Of a stretch of 64,000 nt of DNA, positions 4,279 through 61,388 are shown piece by piece; the stretch's first letter is position 1, and every line of letters begins with the position of its first letter. Both the position numbers and the translations under genes were made by a program. The notes below the pieces were generated by a model that saw nothing but the letters and a program-made list of their open reading frames with translations, had not been told where the DNA came from and did no database searches. The stretch spans positions 62,001 to 126,000 of IMG/VR virus record IMGVR_UViG_3300042511_000879; one strand, given 5' to 3'.

Positions 4279-7200
4279 TTATGCTTGTATTTTAACATGT
4301 ATTTTAAAGTTATATGAATATCCATATTTTTTATTATATATTAGTCTAAAACTTAAACCGTCATTTTGATAACTTTGAATATTGAAATTAGTTAACTCTA
4401 CATAATTATCAGCAGTTAATTGTGATGTTTGAGTAACCGACACGAAACTCGTTTCTAATCCCTTACCTTCAATTCCATAAATTTTAATTGAATCAATAAT
4501 AAAACGAGGGGATATATTTGATTTTGAATAGATTTGCAAATCATCTTTTATCGAAGATTTATCTCCATATGAATTTGCAGCTTTAACGTATCTTCCGAAA
4601 TATCTTTCAATTCCATCTTCAGTTAATTCATTTAATATTGCAGTTGATAAATAAAAATCTGCAATTACTTGAGATTCATCTTCAATCCAATGTATGGATG
4701 CTGTATTAGATTGTACAAACCTAATTTTATCTAAAACTTCAATTGAAAGCTCTTGAACATTATCAAATTTAGTTATATCATAAGTATCTCTGACCTTCAT
4801 GATTGTTGATGCCATGAATGTTTTCTTTTCTACAGGACTTAATGTTCCATTTGTTGTTTCAGATTCTCCACCACTAAGGGCTCTTGTGAAATAATCTTTA
4901 GAATACTTAGATTTAAAAACATTAATCTCTTTTTTATCAATTGCAATCTCTCCAATCATCGGATATAATGGTAATTTATCAGTTGTTTGAGAAAGTTTTA
5001 ATATATTTTTCGAGTCTTGCTCATTAACTTTATGATAAAAATAGTTACTAATAAAACCATAGTTGTTTGTATTTTCTTTAAAAGAATCAAAAGAGATTCC
5101 TTTACCATTTAACTTGTTGTACGCAATTAAAACAGATTCTTTTAACGCAGTTGTTGGAACTAATGGATCCTCTTCTATTTTAAGTACTTTTTTATCTGAA
5201 TTAATATCTGAAAAAGTTATAATATCATTAAAAATAGGATTATAATCTCCATTCATTCTTCTCAAAATAGATACATATCCTCCATCTTTTCTATCTTCTA
5301 CGATATTACCAATTTGATTTGAAGATAGTCTAAACGCTTTTGGTCTTTCTGGATCTGAAGTTGGTTGTATAATAGAAGGTTTAACAACATCGACACCTGA
5401 TTCTACCGAAAGAACAAAATCATTTTTTGATAGAGTTCCATCTTCAGCAATTGTAACATAGTTTACTTGTCCAAATGAATTAAATCTTTTAGAATATTTA
5501 TAAGCACTAATTGAATCTAATAAATTTGCAAACTCATTTTTACCTCCTTGTGAATAATCAAAAGGTCCAGTTTCAGCTACCAAAGACATAAATTGTGGAT
5601 CTAATCGACCCTCTAGAGGATATGGAGCAATAGGCGGATCATTAGGATTTATTGGTTGCGTCGGATTCGGTACAAATTTATACGGGTGTCCACTTACTAA
5701 TATTGAAGTGTCATCAATAACATCGATAACTTTTACTGCGTATGTATCTCCTGTCACTGTGAAATATATCCATGAATATTCGCCAATAGAATTTCTCTTA
5801 ACAAACTCAGTAAACTTCGCAGTGCCATTATTTATTGATATAATCGATGCCTTAATAATAAAAGGAGTATCAGGGTCTGAATCTGGCTCTGGAGTTGATC
5901 CAATAAAATCAATACGAAATGGAATTCTAGTATCTATAATATCACCGCCTAATGTTAAATCGTTTATAGTGTATAGCAAGTATCTATTAATATCTTCTTC
6001 TGTTATGTCATTTTCAATAATCTTTAATTCTATGTTAACACAAATAAATTTAAACTTGTCATTTTTAACACAATTAAAAACAATTGAATTTGATGGAATA
6101 GTATCATCGCTACTGTATGACAGATATGCTCCAAACTTATAATCACTTATGTCAATTCCTTTCAAGAACTCAGTTGGAATTTCATTTGTAATTTCTTTTC
6201 TTTTTTGGAAAACATATCTAAGACCTCTAAAAACTGCCGATGAATTTTTTTCAAAATTACCTATATCAAATTTAGACCATAATCTTTTTGATTTATTATC
6301 AAACCACGACTGTGCAGAGTTGCTTGTATCAAAATAACCAGTCCAATTAAAATGTTTATCAAAATAATTAAACGTAGTACTTTTTAATTTATCAATGGTT
6401 AATCCTCCATCACCTGCAAAATCTAAATAATTATTTAAGTCTTTTCTAGAGCCTAAAATGCTAGTTGGAATTCTATTTAAGTGAAAATGTTCCATATTCA
6501 AGGATTCAATATTTCTTTTTGAATCCAATTCTATATTTGGCGATAAATTATCATCTCCAAACGCCTCGTTTACATTTAAAACATAAGGTAAATTTCTACC
6601 ATTTGATGAATTCTTAAGTTCATATTTACAAATAGTCGGAACAACTCTACTTAAAAGAGCAGTTTCCTTAAGACTATTTTCTTTAAGACGGTCATATTCA
6701 TTTAAGAGTTGAGTTTTTGCGACTGTTTCTGAAGTTTCCGCGGATAAAATATCTCTAAGACCTGAATAGAATAATGATGCAGTAGTTGTTGAAGACTCAT
6801 CAAAATCATAAACCAAATCTCCTAGGTCTGAGTTTCTTGTTGAGTAAAAATCAAAATCAAAATCTTTAAAATCATATGCAGCAAATTTACCATGAACCGT
6901 TTTATATTCATCATAAACCTCATATACTCTATCATTTGAAAGTTTTGTAGCTCTATCTAAAATAACTCTATAGTAATTTGTATCAAATGGGTCTTGGTTA
7001 ATCTCTATAATTCTAACAAATTTATCAGAATCTTTTTGTTTTAAGTATTCTCCAACTTGAACATTTCCAATTTCTGAAGATTTAACAAGAACTGATTGTC
7101 CTTCAGATGATCCAGCAATAGTTGTCCATATATTCCAAACATTTGGAATATTAGCGTTTAGTCCAATATCATCAAATTCACCATTATCAACATTAATAAA

Positions 7201-52931: not shown

Positions 52932-53144
52932 TTATGAATGGGTACCTTTTAAATTGTTAACCGAACGTTGAACACATTCAGGACATAGAGATGCAGTGGC
53001 TTCGGCTCCTACAACAGTCCAGTTCTCGCATGGTCCATCTTCAGGCCCATATTCTGCCCATTTACTCTTTTCCGGTTCTGAATTCTGACAAATCATCGAT
53101 ACGACCTTACGGCCTTTAACTTCAGTTTCTTTAGTTTTCCACAT
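52932..53144 (-). CDS. Small putative zinc-binding protein
   Basis: C...C...CPEC pattern; class-2 promoter at 53162-53188. Confidence 0.6.
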   Translation of the reverse strand: MWKTKETEVKGRKVVSMICQNSEPEKSKWAEYGPEDGPCENWTVVGAEATASLCPECVQRSVNNLKGTHS

Positions 53145-53189
53145 AGTATATTTATTTTAGATTTATATTGAGTTATTCCAATTTGTTTC

Positions 53190-54590
53190 AGGGTAAACTT
53201 AAAGAACCTTTGAGTTAAGTGAAAAATTTTTATTCTGTAATTCAGACCGGGTGCACCCTCCTATTGCGTGGGAAAATTTGGGTTTCAATCATCAAAAAAA
53301 TGAAATAATCTACCAGAACGATTGAACCGTTGAGGCCGTTTGAAATACATAAAGTCACATTGAGGGACTATTGGGCGGCCCTCCCCTAGCCCTATTAATA
53401 CCTATTGGCACATCGGTCGTCACAGTATACTGAGCACTCTATTGGAGGTATCAGAATGGGTGTGTCCTTCCTGTAGATACTCTATATAATAACGGATGTA
53501 CACTATAGGGGTTTTTAAATATCGTATACTATTAGATAGAATAGTTCTCTTTTTAATTAGAATCCCTACAGCACGCCCCCACCCCGCCCCTTTGGGACTC
53601 TATGGGATAGAGGTCAATTTTATTTTTTTCTATAGGATTTTTTTGAGAGCTTAGAGACTTGGAGTACCTCAGAGAGGTGAGAGAGCGGTGAGTCACCCTA
53701 CCTTTCACCTTTGAGACTTGGATACTTCTTATATCCTCATAGGACCTATTAGTTTCAACGGGTTACTCTTTATTTCACAGTACACTTCGTGCCTGACACA
53801 GTACCCTCAGGTCAATCTGAGCCAACCATCGGTAATTGGTAACGGTCTTATTGGTTAATTATAGGTTCTTTATGTTTCTAGTAACGGTGATATCCATTCT
53901 ATCGGTCTCAATTGGTCTTTGGTCACCTTCCGGACCTGGGTAATTTTTTGGGTAGGGCAACATTGAAGTACTCTGAGGGTGGGATGGACCATTGGCTACC
54001 ATCGGAGGACCATCAGAGGACCATTGACGCTGGGAGGGTCTCTCAACATTGAGGTATTGATATTCCCGGACGGGGATAATTCGTCCACTTCTATGAAACA
54101 CATTTATCAAAGGTCTATATTAGTTAGGAAGTCTAGAGCTTTGATCCTACAGTCCTTTGAGAACCTCTAGACCTGGCTTTTATAAGGATCCACCCTGGGT
54201 GCTGACCGCTCCGTAGACCTGCCCAACCGGTATTGAGGGTCAATGCACACGTGCCCTAGAGTCCAGTGGTGACTGGAAGAGTCCTGCTCTACCCTAGTTA
54301 CCCTGTGTCTGTAGTGAACTATTAGTATTATTGTCATTCTTGTGCAGAGCACACCTGCATTGTGCAGGCATTGACCTGCATTGCCTATTGCAACAGTTGA
54401 TCAGTGCACTACAGGTAGATAGGTCTATTGCCCTTACAACAATATTGAGCCTATTGAGCATATTGAACCTTTGAGGACATTGAGTAATCATTGAATTGCA
54501 TTGATTATTGCTACAGGGCATTGAGCCGGGCATTGCTACAGGACATTGATCCTGGACATTGCGCCGGGCATTGATCTGGGGACATTGATC
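53190..54590. other. Non-coding, GC-richer, repeat- and hairpin-rich island (left)
   Basis: About 1.4 kb without a credible gene in an otherwise fully packed genome; many (C/T)ATTG and GGACCAT motifs, hairpins and C runs. Confidence 0.7.
54350..54590 (+). repeat. Degenerate short-period (C/T)ATTG array
   Basis: About 19 ATTG copies between 54359 and 54587, mostly spaced 9-14 nt; the later copies read GG(A/G)CATTG. Confidence 0.85.
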
Positions 54591-54593
54591 CTC

Positions 54594-55298
54594 CTATTTG
54601 AATCTGGGAGTATTGATCCTGGGAGAGTTGAAACGGAGATTAGGCGCGGAGATACTCTTCTGTTTATAAGCTGGGCCTAGGTCCCTTTCTGGTGCCTTAT
54701 AAGGGGACATTGTATTTGTCTTGTCAAAACTTGTTATAGGGAATGGGGCTGGTTCCGATACCTTATTATTAGATGGGTCATATTGTTTTTGGCTAGTACG
54801 TTTTATAGGTGCACTATCTGGTTGTTTATTAACATTTGCGTTAGGGTCTCCATTATCGTGCCCGAAGTCACTATCTATAGAACCTCTATCTCCACCTGTA
54901 TTGTTTGCTATCATATTACCCATTTGTGCATCTATAAGAGATTCTTTAAACCCCTTAGAACGAGGTTGAGGTGTTTGAGCTATATCGGTTTCCTTAGTTG
55001 GTGTTTGGGCCTGATCGCTTGACGATAGTGTTTGTTTATCGTATTGGACATTTTGATTGGCTGGATTATTTTGCTTTCGGGCAGTATCTGAGGTTGCCTT
55101 ATTACCCTGTTGGGTTTGAGCATTAACATCACTTCCAGCCTTATTTATACCCGTTGCATCTATAGGAGATATTGAACTGTCTCCTGGGGATGGATTTAAA
55201 CTACTAGGAACTGATGAGGTATCTGTCTTATTAGAGGTTTGAGTCTTAGCAGCATTTACCCTATCGCTTATACTAATTTGAGTTAGACCTATCTTCAT
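54594..55298 (-). CDS. Low-complexity, probably disordered S/T/Q/P/D-rich protein
   Basis: 705-nt open frame with few hydrophobic residues. Confidence 0.6.
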   Translation of the reverse strand: MKIGLTQISISDRVNAAKTQTSNKTDTSSVPSSLNPSPGDSSISPIDATGINKAGSDVNAQTQQGNKATSDTARKQNNPANQNVQYDKQTLSSSDQAQTPTKETDIAQTPQPRSKGFKESLIDAQMGNMIANNTGGDRGSIDSDFGHDNGDPNANVNKQPDSAPIKRTSQKQYDPSNNKVSEPAPFPITSFDKTNTMSPYKAPERDLGPAYKQKSISAPNLRFNSPRINTPRFK

Positions 55299-55887: not shown

Positions 55888-56032
55888 TTAATTAGATATG
55901 TAAATATAATCATTATTTGTGATTCCGGAAACTGTTTGCGCAAGTATTTTCAGAAAGTTATTAACAATTGTTGTTCATAAGTTTTTTGAGAAACTGTTTC
56001 GGGATTCATATAAATTGATTATATTTACATAT
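55888..56032. promoter_or_regulatory. Divergent pair of class-1 promoters
   Basis: Minus: TTTC(55931-55928)-N19-TATATTTA(55908-55901). Plus: TTTC(55997-56000)-N19-TATATTTA(56020-56027). Confidence 0.85.
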
Positions 56033-56039
56033 GAAAAAT

Positions 56040-56165
56040 AGCAAAATGACATAACGGGTTCGTATAGCACAAAGAATCGAGAGATTCGACACGGGCGGTC
56101 CTTTAAACCAGGGGAGGAAGAGTAGACTCCAGCTCGTCTTCTATTTAGAGGTCTGAAACGCCACT
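56040..56165 (+). ncRNA. Candidate small structured RNA
   Basis: Lies directly downstream of a class-1 promoter, has no usable ORF (ATG...TAA after 7 codons), is GC-richer, and contains a GAATC-GAGA-GATTC GNRA hairpin plus nested stems. Confidence 0.45.
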
Positions 56166-58350: not shown

Positions 58351-59460
58351 ATGAACAGACAATCTTACTTAATCCGCACACAACCTAACGAATTCATCGT
58401 TTTAGTAAACACGAAAAACCCAATTGACACCCTCTTAATCGAGCCTGGTCATTCAAAATATACTTGGGTCCAAAACCAAGACGCTAACCGTATTATCAAC
58501 ATCACCGAAACTGGTAGATGGACAAGTAATAAGGACTATAATAACGATTACGGAACCTCAACATCTAAACAACCTCAATCGGTTAACCCTTGTGCCCCTG
58601 TTGAGGTTACACTTACCAAATTAGACGACTTAAATATCGATGATTCCCTATTTACCAGCCTTCCAACTGGAACTATCTTTGACCAGTTTTGTTCAACTGA
58701 AGGTGGATTCTTACCTGGAACTAATATAATGGCTGCTGGAGCTCCTGGTGTCGGTAAAACAACAGTGCTATTAGAACTTCTATCTAAGCTATCTGCTCAA
58801 GGTAAACGGGTCTTATTTATATCTGCCGAAATGAACCAGATAGATATGGCACGTTACCTTAAAAGATTCCCACACTGGGGACAATTACCTATCCTTTTCC
58901 TATCTGACTACACTGAGTCTTGTCCAAAAGGAGTAATTGAAGGTGTACTTAACCAAGGATGGGACGTTGTCTTAACCGATTCATATACCGAAGTTAACGA
59001 TACCATCAAGGAGGAATGTAACATGACCAGAGGTAAAACCGAAAAATGGTTCCTAGACCTAATGACTCAGCATAATAAAGGTGGTAACAAGACGAAAACA
59101 TATACAACCTTCGTAACTATCCTGCAATTATCTAAAGGTGGTAATTTCGTTGGTTCTAATAAACTGAAACACATGACAACTGCGATGATGATGTTGGACT
59201 GGGACGGAAACGAAAACTCAGGTAGAAGGTTCATGGAGTTCTCTAAAAACAGAACAGGTCAAGTCGGTAAAAAACTATATTTCGAATTATCAGATGGTGT
59301 TTCCTTCGACGAAGGCCGATATACAAGAGACCTATTTAACGACGAGGTCCTAGCTGAGGAAAGAAAAGCCCTAACAGGAGAAAGTAATGCCTTCGACAAA
59401 CTATTCGGTTTCGACAAGGATGCCGTACCTGAGGAATTAAAAACCCTGGTAGAACTATAA
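58351..59460 (+). CDS. RadA/Sms-like RecA-fold ATPase without Zn finger or Lon-like domain
   Basis: GGFLPG...GAPGVGKTT, VLFISAEM, LTDS, GSNKLKHMTTAMM and KNRTG (compare RadA KNRFG). Confidence 0.75.
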   Translation: MNRQSYLIRTQPNEFIVLVNTKNPIDTLLIEPGHSKYTWVQNQDANRIINITETGRWTSNKDYNNDYGTSTSKQPQSVNPCAPVEVTLTKLDDLNIDDSLFTSLPTGTIFDQFCSTEGGFLPGTNIMAAGAPGVGKTTVLLELLSKLSAQGKRVLFISAEMNQIDMARYLKRFPHWGQLPILFLSDYTESCPKGVIEGVLNQGWDVVLTDSYTEVNDTIKEECNMTRGKTEKWFLDLMTQHNKGGNKTKTYTTFVTILQLSKGGNFVGSNKLKHMTTAMMMLDWDGNENSGRRFMEFSKNRTGQVGKKLYFELSDGVSFDEGRYTRDLFNDEVLAEERKALTGESNAFDKLFGFDKDAVPEELKTLVEL

Positions 59461-60120
59461 CAAATATACGGCTGGCAGCCGAAACTGCCTTAATTAGATA
59501 GAGATTTCCGGGAGTGTGGTGTTCCCGGAATTCTTGTATTCCGAGGCTGGCAGTTTCAAAATACCCGCTGGGGCAAGGGACGATTACCAATGGCCGGGCA
59601 AGGCAGAATTGTTTCACCCGCTGCGGCACTAGGAACTGGTAGAAATCTGGTGCTGGGCATGGTTTCGGTTGGTTTTTGTGGTGCCCAGGAGTGTGGAGAG
59701 GGTCCGGAGTGTCTCGGAGGGTGACCCAACTCGACGAGAGGTTTAAGGCCCAATGAGGAACATTGAGGAACATGAAGGGGCCCTTAGAGGAACATTGAGG
59801 TGACATTGCGAGCTTGGAGTGCCTGCTATATATCATTTTAATAAAAAAGGTAGAACTGGGGTACCTGGTTGGCTGGAGATTGAAAGGGGTTAGGGAGGGT
59901 TGGTAGGACCATAAGGGGCTTAGAATCTGGACAGGTATGGGGGTCAGGAGGGGTAGAAGGGTTCTTTATAGGGGGTTTATATCCTTATACTGTTATTCTT
60001 ATATCTGTATATCTATATAGAGGTTTAGATGTCTTAGATGTTTTTGTTTTAGGTTTATTAGATTTATTTCTTTTTTATTGTGGGGGAGGGGTGGATTCCG
60101 GACGTGCCGGACCTAAATAA
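59461..60120. other. Non-coding, GC-richer, hairpin-rich island (right) with G runs and an AT-rich tract
   Basis: Multiple perfect stems in 59469-59730, GAGGAACATTGAGG repeats, G runs at 59886-59975 and 60082-60094, and a T-rich tract at 59976-60080. Confidence 0.7.
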
Positions 60121-60144
60121 AAAAGAGGACCTTTAGGGTCCTCT
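60118..60144 (-). terminator. Intrinsic terminator
   Basis: AGAGGACC/GGTCCTCT stem (60124-60144) followed by a T run on the minus strand, after 60151..60396. Confidence 0.8.
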
Positions 60145-60150
60145 GTGTGG

Positions 60151-60396
60151 TTATTTTTGTATGTCTATAATATCGTATTTGTGGAAACCCTTTTCTATGT
60201 TCCGGATGGCAGCATCGATATCAGTATACTTGCCTTTCCACTGGGTTTCAAAATTACCTTTTACTGTAATTCCTTTAAATCCGTCTGGCGATGCACCTTG
60301 GATTGTTGTAGTGTCAAATGGTTTATCATAGATAATTTCAATTTGGTATTTACTGGATTCATTTAAGAACGCTTCAAAGGGTTTGATATGTTTCAT
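60151..60396 (-). CDS. Small protein with capsid-targeting-like leader
   Basis: MKHIKPFEAFLNE|S. Confidence 0.65.
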   Translation of the reverse strand: MKHIKPFEAFLNESSKYQIEIIYDKPFDTTTIQGASPDGFKGITVKGNFETQWKGKYTDIDAAIRNIEKGFHKYDIIDIQK

Positions 60397-60800
60397 AATT
60401 TTAAGTAGTTTACTTTGAGTTTGGTTTCTCCTAGGGCCCAGGCCTTAGTGAGTCTGTGGTGGCCGTCGTAGATTACAGGTCCTTCTGGGTATTCGATAAC
60501 ATTTATTGTTTTGACTTTACCCTCTCTAAGTATCATCTCTGTAACCTTACTAGATTGTATATTCCTTTGAGTGATATGTATATCCTTTGGGTTAATGGTT
60601 TTAGGTTTGGCCTTGTCCTCGTTCTCCTCCCATGTTTGGACTATTTCGCTCCAGGGACGGTTACTGATTTGGAAGATACCATCTATTCGTTTTGCATCAT
60701 CGAATATAGAACCCTTTGGAAGTCCTTCTACCTTTTCGATAGCGGCTTCCTGTTTTTTGGATTCATTTAGGAATTGTTCGAATAGTTTTACAAGTTTCAT
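60393..60800 (-). CDS. ParB/Srx-fold protein with capsid-targeting-like leader
   Basis: MKLVKLFEQFLNE|S leader; INPKDIHITQ...VIYDGHHRLTKAWALG is a ParB-N signature. Confidence 0.75.
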   Translation of the reverse strand: MKLVKLFEQFLNESKKQEAAIEKVEGLPKGSIFDDAKRIDGIFQISNRPWSEIVQTWEENEDKAKPKTINPKDIHITQRNIQSSKVTEMILREGKVKTINVIEYPEGPVIYDGHHRLTKAWALGETKLKVNYLKL

Positions 60801-60803
60801 AGA

Positions 60804-61388
60804 TTAATAGTATGATGGTTCTCCTCTTGTTGCGAATAATGCGGTGATGTATGGTTTACCATCATTAGTGATAATTGCATATCCTCTATCATGTAACCAA
60901 GTTCTAAATTCATTGGCAGTTGAGTTAAAATAGGATTTTGAACTATTCCCAATCTTAAGATCGATAATCGGTTCTCCATCTTCTAGTTTTCCTGCCTTTC
61001 CGCCTTTAAGTGGAATATGGATTAAGGGTCTATTAGGTGTTGTATTACTCTTTTCTGGAGTTAATTTAACGTCCCAATCAAATGATTTTTGTAGGTCCTT
61101 CATTAGGGCACTGAATACTTTTTGTTTTTCAATGTCTTTAATATCAACTACATCATATCCTGCAGCACGGATTCCGTCTTCAAATTCAGCTCTCATTTCT
61201 GGAGTAAAATCAAGTACCTCTAGGTCTTGGTTCCATGCCCATCTAGAGATGAATTTATCAACATCTTGATTTATTGTTACGTATGGCAATCTATCTGTTT
61301 TATCAGTGGTTGCCTTCTTAATCATTCCTTTGATACTATAACTTTTAGCCTCGTTTACGAATTGTTCGAATAGTTTTATTTTTTTCAT
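60804..61388 (-). CDS. Hypothetical protein with capsid-targeting-like leader
   Basis: MKKIKLFEQFVNE|A. Confidence 0.65.
   Translation of the reverse strand: MKKIKLFEQFVNEAKSYSIKGMIKKATTDKTDRLPYVTINQDVDKFISRWAWNQDLEVLDFTPEMRAEFEDGIRAAGYDVVDIKDIEKQKVFSALMKDLQKSFDWDVKLTPEKSNTTPNRPLIHIPLKGGKAGKLEDGEPIIDLKIGNSSKSYFNSTANEFRTWLHDRGYAIITNDGKPYITALFATRGEPSYY

What the first reader, a model, noticed from the sequence alone, without database searches (positions are those of the whole stretch)
54350..54590. Strand-biased, near-helically spaced CATTG array shared with the right island
Seen: about 19 ATTG copies in 230 bp, mostly 9-14 nt apart and drifting from TGCATTG to GGRCATTG. The right island has GAGGAACATTGAGG twice (about 59757-59803), and GAGGACATTGAG occurs at 54474. 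There are no unique spacers of CRISPR length. Inference: an iteron-like or parS-like array for a cooperative DNA-binding protein (initiator, small terminase or partition protein), or a repeated RNA motif acting as a protein sponge.
Basis: partly seen in the sequence, partly recalled or inferred. Interest (0 to 1): 0.6.

Follow-up and report, generated by a model that had tools for sequence, protein, structure and literature searches.

The report
Conserved short-motif repeat array in phage
An uncultured jumbo phage carries about twenty same-strand copies of a 7-base motif in a non-coding stretch, kept in all its close relatives and echoed in a second non-coding island 5 kb away, so it is probably a multi-site docking platform for an unknown DNA- or RNA-binding factor.

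Summary
Window 54330-54620 has 21 ATTG against 1 CAAT. About 1.9 per 250 nt are expected, and the maximum elsewhere in the 236-kb genome is 8. The motif is R-Y-A-T-T-G-A.

The array is non-coding. It starts right after the TAG stop of a conserved 234-aa gene, at the right end of a 1.45-kb ORF-free, GC-enriched island (I1, 53145-54596). All nine close relatives sampled keep it, with 11-27 copies. Copy number and spacers turn over, but motif columns are better conserved than spacer columns (81% against 59%). A second island (I2, 59461-60123) holds 3-5 copies on the same strand in every genome that has both islands. More distant relatives carry arrays of other short motifs at the same two places.

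My reading is a multivalent recognition array for an unidentified sequence-specific factor. An iteron-like DNA role (replication control, T4 oriE-like setting) and an RNA scaffold or sponge role are nearly tied. Packaging-site and partition readings are disfavoured. No transcript or replication data could be obtained.

The parts
54330..54596 (+). Non-coding part of the array. About 20 same-strand copies of R-Y-ATTG-A. Left block is CCTGCATTG-type units (10-11 nt). A conserved palindrome CAACAGTTG sits at 54391. The middle block is AT-rich units (5-17 nt). The right block is GGRCATTGATCC-type units (12-14 nt).
54597..54640 (-). Last array-like units (GGGAGTATTGATCC, GGGAGAGTTGAA). They overlap the conserved C-terminal codons (...FNSPRINTPRFK, stop TAG) of the 234-aa gene. 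The array looks like an extension of this 12-nt coding repeat past the stop codon.
53145..54329 (+). Rest of island I1. It is ORF-free, 42% GC in a 34% GC genome, with no period-3 signal. Invariant blocks (for example the C-rich 20-mer at 53571) alternate with variable stretches. Some hairpins have swapped stems. It also holds 16 further ATTG, including GAGGACCAT(TG) units at 54005-54030.
59461..60123 (+). Island I2. It is ORF-free, 47% GC, with G twice as frequent as C on the + strand. It lies between the RadA-like gene and a minus-strand terminator. It has a 55-nt invariant block (around 59700-59752), a mini-array, G-rich blocks and an AT-rich repeat stretch (59975-60085).
59755..59812 (+). 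Mini-array in I2: GAGGAACATTGAGG twice plus GACATTG. Relatives have 1-5 copies here. L015/L036 have GATATTTAGG x8-14 at the same place.
59506..59530 (+). Hairpin with an invariant loop GTGTGGTG and three different stem versions in relatives. It is preceded by ATTAGATAG, a 9-mer that occurs only twice in the window, once in I1 (53531) and once in I2 (59493).
54594..55298 (-). 234-aa low-complexity protein gene whose stop codon abuts the array. It is the fastest-evolving neighbour (53-68% identity among array-bearing relatives).
58351..59460 (+). 369-aa RecA-fold ATPase (RadA/DnaB-C/KaiC-like) directly upstream of I2.
60124..60144 (-). Intrinsic terminator of the minus-strand gene 60151-60396. 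It faces the hairpin at 59506, so I2 lies between two inward-facing stem-loops.

Best explanation
The array is a selected, non-coding, multivalent recognition platform. About 20 same-strand copies of R-Y-ATTG-A are read by one sequence-specific factor that has not been identified. The same factor would read the 3-5 copies in island I2, 5 kb away.

I favour, narrowly, a DNA-level iteron-like role in replication initiation or its control. The two islands bracket the only opposite-strand early-gene module of a T4-type jumbo phage. That is the kind of strand-switch region where T4 oriE, oriF and oriG lie. The arrangement of a large site cluster plus a small one resembles two-site origins such as P4 ori/crr or P1 oriR/incA.

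Shown: the array is real, non-coding, conserved in its clade and evolves by unit turnover. The motif is better conserved than the spacers. The motif is shared with I2.

Inferred: that a protein binds it, that binding is to DNA, and that the purpose is replication control.
For: Enrichment and strand bias.

Presence in all nine close relatives, with 11-27 copies and local duplications.

Motif columns 81% against spacer columns 59% pairwise identity.

CATTGA/ATTGAG is among the top shared, same-strand 6-mers of I1 and I2 in all four genomes that have both islands. CATTGAGG is almost confined to the islands.

Other short-motif arrays occupy the same two positions in more distant relatives, which is what co-evolving site/binder pairs look like. 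Examples are CTCTATGTG, CAAAGGGTT, GCTTACTGGGGAA x9 and GATATTTAGG x8-14.

Setting: the islands flank the only + strand gene block of a genome otherwise transcribed from the minus strand. Early-type promoters sit there. Nucleotide-metabolism genes and a RadA-like ATPase are nearby. I2 has an AT-rich repeat stretch beside G-rich blocks and lies between two inward-facing stem-loops.

Literature: T4 oriE has a cluster of 12-nt direct repeats of unresolved role, and the active T4 origins lie at strand-switch regions (PMC3016281).
Against: Spacing is irregular (5-17 nt within blocks), with periods of 10 and 12-13 nt rather than one helical period.

The motif is only 7 nt long.

No initiator gene was identified. 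The true DnaB-type helicase is 96 kb away. There is no DnaA-box cluster and no marked AT-rich unwinding element next to the I1 array.

The islands are GC-enriched, like the tRNA clusters that are the only other GC-rich ORF-free regions of this genome. They contain hairpins with swapped stems. That points to RNA.

The T4 oriE repeats lie inside gene 5 coding sequence and have no proven role.

No replication or transcription data could be obtained.
Confidence: 0.35

Rival explanations
1. RNA-level reading. I1 and I2 are long structured non-coding transcripts or 3' UTRs, with the G-rich + strand as sense. The array displays about 20 single-stranded YAUUGA motifs as a scaffold or sponge for an RNA-binding protein, in the manner of CsrB/RsmZ with a different motif. 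If I1 is instead transcribed from the minus strand, it could act as a pairing partner for the complementary motif in the other island.
For: The only GC-rich ORF-free regions of the genome are the tRNA clusters, I1 and I2.

G exceeds C on the + strand, strongly so in I2.

There are hairpins with compensatory or swapped stems and an invariant loop. Local alignment-fold z-scores reach -4 to -5 in I1, better on the + strand.

Irregular spacing suits RNA motif clusters.

CAAT is almost absent from the array, so ATTG cannot be paired within it.

Flanks of the motif are somewhat more complementary than permuted flanks (z 4.3 with G-U pairs allowed).

I2 could be the 3' UTR of the RadA-like mRNA.
Against: No Rfam family matches.

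The array itself folds no better than shuffles (z -0.9 and -1.3). Only about a third of copies sit in a stem of 4 bp or more.

The global consensus fold has little covariation.

I1-left evolves about as fast as third codon positions of a neighbouring gene.

No promoter of the 20-copy family lies in either island.

No phage sponge RNA of this kind is known, and no candidate RNA-binding partner was identified.
Confidence: 0.3
2. No sequence-specific function. The array is a slippage-prone extension of the 12-nt coding repeat at the 3' end of the 234-aa gene, homogenised by unequal exchange. At most it serves by composition, for example as a C-rich periodic Rho-loading (rut) stretch on the minus-strand mRNA just after the stop codon.
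For: The last units are inside the conserved C-terminal (S/T)PR(F/I)N coding repeat.

Local perfect duplications and copy-number change are seen.

Different motifs sit at the same place in other clades, often with 9-13-nt periods and C exceeding G on the mRNA strand.

Close relatives are only about 20% diverged at third codon positions.

The 12-13-nt period of the right block recalls the regularly spaced C residues described for Rho-dependent terminators (from memory, not checked here).
Against: The motif is held across unit types whose spacers differ completely, and motif columns are more conserved than spacers.

The same motif recurs in I2, which is not next to that gene, in all four genomes with both islands.

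The array is kept in every close relative.

The minus-strand composition is only mildly rut-like (C 24%, G 18%).
Confidence: 0.2
3. Packaging (pac) site for a small terminase, or a centromere (parS/parC-like) for a partition protein.
For: Short direct-repeat clusters are used by some pac sites and by type Ib/II/III centromeres (from memory).

Four GATC lie within 70 bp in a genome that avoids GATC.

A 135-aa protein near I2 has a weak ParB-like match in PHROGs.
Against: TerL is of the T4 headful type and lies 111 kb away.

Three near-identical contigs of about 234-236 kb start at different points. That suggests permuted or circular assembly rather than a fixed end here.

No ParB_N or tubulin family is found in the genome. 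No ParA, ParM or ribbon-helix-helix gene was found among the ten neighbouring proteins scanned.
Confidence: 0.07
4. The array is protein-coding, either as the minus-strand ORF 54294-54533, as a read-through extension of the 234-aa protein, or as a frame kept by four-base decoding of UCAA by the phage's odd tRNA.
For: The minus strand of the array has few stops. The ORF after the TAG stop is in the same frame in 4 of 7 genomes. The genome encodes a tRNA with an 8-nt anticodon loop, called (ttga) by ARAGORN.
Against: Frames and lengths are not conserved, and the unit periods of 10 and 13 nt put the same unit in all three frames.

No suppressor tRNA is present.

Reading UCAA as one step does not open a longer or conserved frame.
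Confidence: 0.02

Closest known systems
T4 oriE 'iterons' (cluster of 12-nt direct repeats at a T4 replication origin)
   Same: Both are in phages with a T4-type large terminase. Both are a cluster of short direct repeats with a period of about 12 nt. T4 oriE, oriF and oriG are reported at regions where transcription switches strand, and oriE depends on an early promoter. Syntenic repeats occur in relatives. The role is unresolved (PMC3016281).
   Different: The T4 repeats lie inside gene 5 coding sequence, where TRF finds a 24-nt period. Here the array is non-coding, irregularly spaced, has about 20 copies, and has a second site 5 kb away.
Two-site iteron systems of phage-plasmids and satellites (P4 ori/crr, P1 oriR/incA, SaPI/PLE origins with 6-8-nt iterons); recalled from memory
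   Same: A short motif is repeated many times in one orientation. Two clusters lie some kb apart, with a RecA-fold/helicase-like gene between or beside them. The motif is lineage-specific.
   Different: No cognate initiator was identified. Spacing is not regular. There is no clear AT-rich unwinding element at the large cluster. The context is GC-rich and looks structured.
CsrB/RsmZ-type sponge RNAs
   Same: About 20 copies of a short motif at irregular spacing on one strand. Some copies sit in loops of short hairpins. Copy number varies between relatives.
   Different: The motif is YAUUGA, not GGA. No defined promoter or terminator was found, and no partner protein is known. No Rfam match. Transcription is not shown.
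Centromeres made of very short repeats (TP228 parH tetramer boxes, pSM19035 heptads, pB171 parC hexamers, pBtoxis tubC 12-mers); recalled from memory
   Same: Arrays of 4-12-nt motifs are bound cooperatively by small DNA-binding proteins, and motifs are lineage-specific.
   Different: No partition NTPase or centromere-binding protein gene was found next to the array, and no ParB_N or tubulin family anywhere in the genome. The phage looks lytic and T4-like.

Membership tests
Origin iterons (plasmid/phage) | Several direct repeats of one motif in one orientation | tested here: met
   20-21 ATTG against 1 CAAT; 11-27 copies in relatives
Origin iterons (plasmid/phage) | Regular spacing in register with the DNA helix | tested here: inconclusive
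   Sub-blocks with periods of 10 and 12-13 nt. Overall spacings are 5-40 nt with no coherent period
Origin iterons (plasmid/phage) | Adjacent AT-rich unwinding element | tested here: inconclusive
   Only a patch of about 25 nt lies left of the I1 array. I2 has an AT-rich repeat stretch of about 110 nt. The AT-richest windows of the region lie elsewhere
Origin iterons (plasmid/phage) | Cognate initiator gene next to the sites | tested here: not met
   The neighbours are of unknown function or are a RadA-like ATPase. The DnaB-type helicase is 96 kb away
Origin iterons (plasmid/phage) | Replication starts there | not testable with these tools
parS / centromere | Partition NTPase and centromere-binding protein genes beside the site | tested here: not met
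   No ParB_N or tubulin family in the genome. No ParA/ParM/RHH among the ten neighbouring proteins scanned. The only CbiA/ParA-type Pfam match is a weak P-loop hit in the RadA-like ATPase
pac site / small terminase site | Site in or near the terminase genes; fixed packaging start | tested here: not met
   T4-type TerL lies 111 kb away. Contig ends of near-identical records differ. Read ends are not testable
CsrB/RsmZ-type sponge RNA | Transcribed as a discrete RNA with promoter and terminator | not testable with these tools
   No expression data. No promoter of the phage's 20-copy family and no terminator flank the array
CsrB/RsmZ-type sponge RNA | Motif presented in hairpin loops or single-stranded stretches | tested here: inconclusive
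   34% of copies have a flanking stem of 4 bp or more against 21% for permuted flanks. Array fold z is -0.9
CsrB/RsmZ-type sponge RNA | GGA core motif / Rfam model match | tested here: not met
   The motif is YAUUGA. No Rfam match even at E up to 5
CRISPR array | Repeats of 24-48 nt separated by unique spacers of similar length | tested here: not met
   Units are 5-17 nt and the spacers are a few recurring types
Type III antitoxin RNA (ToxI-like) | Tandem repeats of about 34-45 nt next to a toxin endoribonuclease gene | tested here: not met
   Units are 7-14 nt and there is no such neighbour
Rho-loading (rut) region | C-rich, G-poor untranslated RNA after a stop codon | tested here: inconclusive
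   The position fits. Minus-strand composition is C 24% and G 18%, and GC skew is +0.18 to +0.31 only at the right end

The most novel reading that the evidence does not exclude
I1 and I2 are phage long non-coding RNAs, and the array is a multivalent decoy. Its consensus YAUUGA(A/U) matches the 8-nt anticodon loop UAUUGAAU of the phage's own unusual tRNA (Ser/Gln-like, ARAGORN '(ttga)', genome 201806-201895). Some units are 5-bp stems with a 6-7-nt loop. The RNA could therefore mimic anticodon stem-loops and soak up a host anticodon nuclease or another anticodon-loop-binding enzyme. More generally, this would be a phage-encoded sponge RNA for a host RNA-binding protein in a phylum reported to lack Hfq and CsrA (shown for Bacteroides; abstract of PMC13370968). 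No such phage RNA has been described.
Probability: 0.1. Interest if true: 0.85.

Novelty: new variant of a known kind. Interest (0 to 1): 0.5.

Why it matters
Jumbo phages of Bacteroidota are almost unstudied, and neither their replication origins nor their regulatory RNAs are known.

This locus gives a concrete, testable handle: a 7-nt motif, two sites, and a clade with natural copy-number variants. Sister clades carry different motifs at the same positions, which is the raw material for finding the binder by co-variation.

If the sites are DNA iterons, they would mark the first origin-control region in this phage group and would help explain the still unexplained T4 oriE repeats. If they act as RNA, it would be a new kind of phage sponge or decoy.

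Tried and rejected
Rfam, at gathering threshold and at E up to 5: no family in either island.

BLASTN of I1 against 50,697 phage records: no match.

Scan of IMG/VR for three spaced CATTGA: only perfect microsatellites in unrelated contigs, so no second lineage with this array.

Folding of the array on either strand: not better than shuffles.

Global consensus fold of I1-left: little covariation. Only local windows are significant.

Hairpin display of the motif: weak, and it does not tell the strands apart.

Coding readings were rejected. The ORF is not conserved. I1-left has no period-3 signal. There is no suppressor tRNA.

A four-base UCAA reading was tried in a script, only because the genome itself encodes a tRNA with an 8-nt loop. 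It opens no frame.

The odd tRNA was sought in five related records and not found. All five are fragments, so this is uninformative.

DnaA boxes: no cluster.

AlphaFold model of the 378-aa neighbour: pLDDT 59, too poor to search. The Atlas places it in DUF932, of unknown function.

PDB, Pfam, PHROGs and NCBIfam scans of ten neighbours: only the RadA-like ATPase is nameable.

No read-based test (transcription, ends, coverage) was therefore possible, and read laying was not used.

A shared clade-specific 6-mer between I1 and I2 was found in the window's clade but not in the L015/L036 clade.

Literature searches gave the T4 oriE parallel only.

Full report
**What the window is.**

The window is bases 62001-126000 of a 236-kb IMG/VR phage record. 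The genome is 34% GC, and almost all of it is transcribed from the minus strand.

Its large terminase is of the T4 family. The nearest cultured relatives are jumbo myoviruses of Sphingomonas, Tenacibaculum and Flavobacterium. The genome carries 29 tRNA genes, all outside the window.

Three near-identical records of 234-236 kb start at different points. The genome is therefore probably nearly complete and circularly permuted, or assembled as a circle.

**The observation.**

- Between 54330 and 54620 there are 21 ATTG on the + strand and one CAAT.
- The window-wide rate predicts 1.9 per 250 nt.
- Dinucleotide shuffles of the array itself give 3.9 +/- 1.9, maximum 11.
- No other 250-nt stretch of the whole genome has more than 8.
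- A position matrix built from 140 copies in seven genomes gives R-Y-A-T-T-G-A, with purine 77%, pyrimidine 91% and A 64%. G is nearly excluded at the last position.
- Spacing is only partly "near helical". One sub-block has a 10-nt period and another a 12-13-nt period. Many spacings are 5-9 or 17 nt, and there is no single coherent period.

**Surroundings.**

The array is the right-hand end of a 1.45-kb stretch with no ORF (I1, 53145-54596). I1 has 42-44% GC against 34% for the genome.

A second such stretch (I2, 59461-60123) has 47% GC, with G twice as frequent as C on the + strand. It lies 5 kb to the right.

Apart from the tRNA clusters, these are the only GC-rich ORF-free regions in the genome.

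Between and beside the islands lie three minus-strand genes and the only + strand gene block of the genome. That block comprises a DUF932 protein, a 157-aa acidic protein and a RadA-like RecA-fold ATPase. Its genes are driven by copies of a promoter-plus-leader element that occurs 20 times in the genome.

Upstream genes are for nucleotide metabolism: thymidylate synthase, a 3'-5' exonuclease and PhoH.

I2 lies between two inward-facing stem-loops:
- a + strand hairpin just after the RadA-like gene;
- a strong minus-strand terminator.

**Not coding.**

- The minus-strand ORF 54294-54533 has no conserved counterpart. In seven relatives the open frames over the array differ in frame and length. 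The same DNA unit is read as DQCP, INA or SMP depending on register, as expected for units of 10 and 13 nt.
- I1 to the left of the array has no period-3 signal. Its ratio is 0.4, against 73 for a neighbouring gene.
- There is no suppressor tRNA.
- The genome encodes a tRNA that ARAGORN draws with an 8-nt anticodon loop, so I tested reading UCAA as one step. It does not open a longer or conserved frame.
- The 234-aa gene ends with a conserved (S/T)PR(F/I)N repeat. The last array-like units (54597-54640) are these codons. The non-coding array begins right after its TAG stop and looks like an outgrowth of that 12-nt repeat.

**Relatives.**

Scans of IMG/VR and of JGI metagenome contigs with two flanking proteins gave about 50 loci.

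All nine distinct close relatives keep the array at the same place and on the same strand. These are relatives whose neighbouring proteins are at least about 70-90% identical. Copy number ranges from 11 to 27.

Copy number and unit order differ, and one genome has four perfect copies of a 30-nt higher-order unit. The array therefore turns over by duplication and loss.

Spacers come in a few recurring types, some of them mutually complementary or palindromic.

In a MAFFT alignment of eight arrays, ATTG positions are 81% identical pairwise against 59% for the rest. The aligner may favour matching repeats, so this is an upper estimate.

The close relatives are only about 20% diverged at third codon positions, and I1-left evolves at about that rate. 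Conservation alone is therefore modest evidence.

Relatives whose DUF932 neighbour is 80% identical or less lack the ATTG array. They keep diverged versions of both islands.

**The second island.**

- In all four genomes for which both islands are on hand, CATTGA or ATTGAG is among the top 6-mers shared by I1 and I2, always on the same strand.
- I2 has 1-5 copies of GGAACATTGAGG-like units directly after a 55-nt block that is invariant among relatives.
- Four of the five CATTGAGG on the + strand of the genome are in the islands.
- The 9-mer ATTAGATAG occurs only twice in the window, once in each island. It is the reverse complement of the core of the 20-copy promoter/leader element.
- The hairpin at the start of I2 keeps its loop GTGTGGTG while the stem has three different versions.

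**Other motifs at the same places.**

More distant relatives have different short arrays at the two syntenic positions. This is the pattern expected if sites and their binder co-evolve. It is also what a slippage-prone spot would give.

| Position | Locus | Array |
|---|---|---|
| I1 array position | L154 | CTCTATGTG, about six copies |
| I1 array position | L156 | CAAAGGGTT x4 |
| I1 array position | L160 | GCTTACTGGGGAA x9, 13-nt period |
| I2 position | L015 and L036 | GATATTTAGG x8-14 |
| I2 position | L155 | GGGACTTA x4 |

Sources.

**DNA or RNA.**

Evidence for a DNA (iteron-like) role:
- The islands flank the only strand-switch module.
- Early promoters and replication or recombination genes are nearby.
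- I2 has an AT-rich repeat stretch next to G-rich blocks and lies between two inward-facing stem-loops.
[quoted passage not shown] It also notes that the active origins lie at strand-switch regions (PMC3016281).

The T4 repeats lie inside gene 5, so that parallel is loose.

Evidence against a DNA role:
- Spacing is irregular.
- No initiator is identifiable, and the true DnaB-type helicase is 96 kb away.
- There is no DnaA-box cluster.

Evidence for an RNA role:
- The islands are GC-enriched and G exceeds C on the + strand, as in the tRNA regions.
- Hairpins have swapped stems and a conserved loop.
- Local alignment-fold z-scores are -4 to -5, better on the + strand.
- Spacing is irregular.
- CAAT is nearly absent from the array, which would keep the motif single-stranded.

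Evidence against an RNA role:
- No Rfam match.
- The array shows no fold signal.
- Hairpin display of the motif is weak.
- No promoter is known.

**Packaging and partition.**

The terminase is T4-type and lies 111 kb away. No ParB_N or tubulin family is in the genome. None of the ten neighbouring proteins scanned matches a partition-protein family beyond a weak P-loop hit in the RadA-like ATPase.

**A coincidence worth recording.**

The unusual tRNA at genome 201806-201895 has the anticodon loop UAUUGAAU. This contains the array consensus. Some units form 5-bp stems with 6-7-nt loops.

Any Ser(UGA)-type loop contains UUGAA, so the chance of such a match is not small. I could not test co-occurrence, because the five related records searched are fragments and gave no match. 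I keep this as a low-probability lead for a decoy RNA.

**Verdict.**

The array is real, non-coding, clade-conserved and shared with a second island. It is best read as a multivalent recognition array for one unidentified factor.

| Reading | Probability |
|---|---|
| DNA iteron-like, replication control | about 0.35 |
| RNA scaffold or sponge | about 0.30 |
| By-product of slippage, with at most a compositional (Rho-loading) role | about 0.20 |
| pac or partition site | about 0.07 |
| Coding | about 0.02 |

It is a new variant of known kinds of repeat arrays rather than a member of any one family. Every family I tested fails at least one defining feature or could not be tested for it.

Noticed in passing
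outside the window: G000:C1:201806-201895 (minus strand): A 90-nt class-II tRNA that ARAGORN draws with an 8-nt anticodon loop UAUUGAAU and labels tRNA-?(Gln|Ser)(ttga). It may be a Ser(UGA) tRNA with an extra loop base, or a four-base decoder. Its loop contains the array motif.
   Followed up: partly
window 39542, 39793, 43650, 55890 (minus); 56217, 57755, 58315 (plus); 20 copies genome-wide: A highly conserved promoter-plus-leader element of about 60 nt. It is often preceded by a terminator hairpin and ends 10-15 nt before an ATG. It marks a class of mostly small genes, probably early. Its upstream edge is usually ATTGAT.
   Followed up: partly
window 56003-56165 (+): A variant of that promoter (56003-56030) is followed not by an ORF but by a GC-rich patch of about 125 nt. 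This is a candidate small RNA in the divergent intergenic region.
   Followed up: no
window 54130-54300 and the same place in relatives: A hypervariable stretch between I1-left and the array, full of GC-rich palindromes of the CCCTAGGG / CCTATAGG type. CCCTA is 19-fold enriched in I1.
   Followed up: no
window 54399-54615; whole genome: GATC is under-represented genome-wide (301 against about 725 expected). Even so, four GATC lie within 70 bp in the right block of the array, as TTGATCC.
   Followed up: no
window 60151-61388 (minus): Three consecutive small genes (81, 135 and 194 aa) share an N-terminal MKxIKxFExFxNE(S/A) signature, which is also seen in a gene of L015. The 135-aa one has a DGHHR motif and a weak ParB-like PHROG match.
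   Followed up: no
L015:7800-9460 and 4700-5250: A relative carries a tandem family of about ten small genes (55-83 aa, each starting MKLGK) built from 12-nt repeats that encode xSV(R/W) tetrapeptides. This coding repeat family is absent from the window, and many related contigs end in this region.
   Followed up: partly
window 53571-53590 and 60082-60094: An invariant C-rich 20-mer in I1 and an invariant G-rich 13-mer at the end of I2 are complementary over 12 nt with one mismatch. This may be trivial for G/C runs.
   Followed up: no
window 52932-53144 (minus): A 70-aa protein with a C...C...CPEC pattern, a possible zinc ribbon, lies between a ClpB-like ATPase gene and I1. It is conserved in all relatives, including those without the array.
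   Followed up: no
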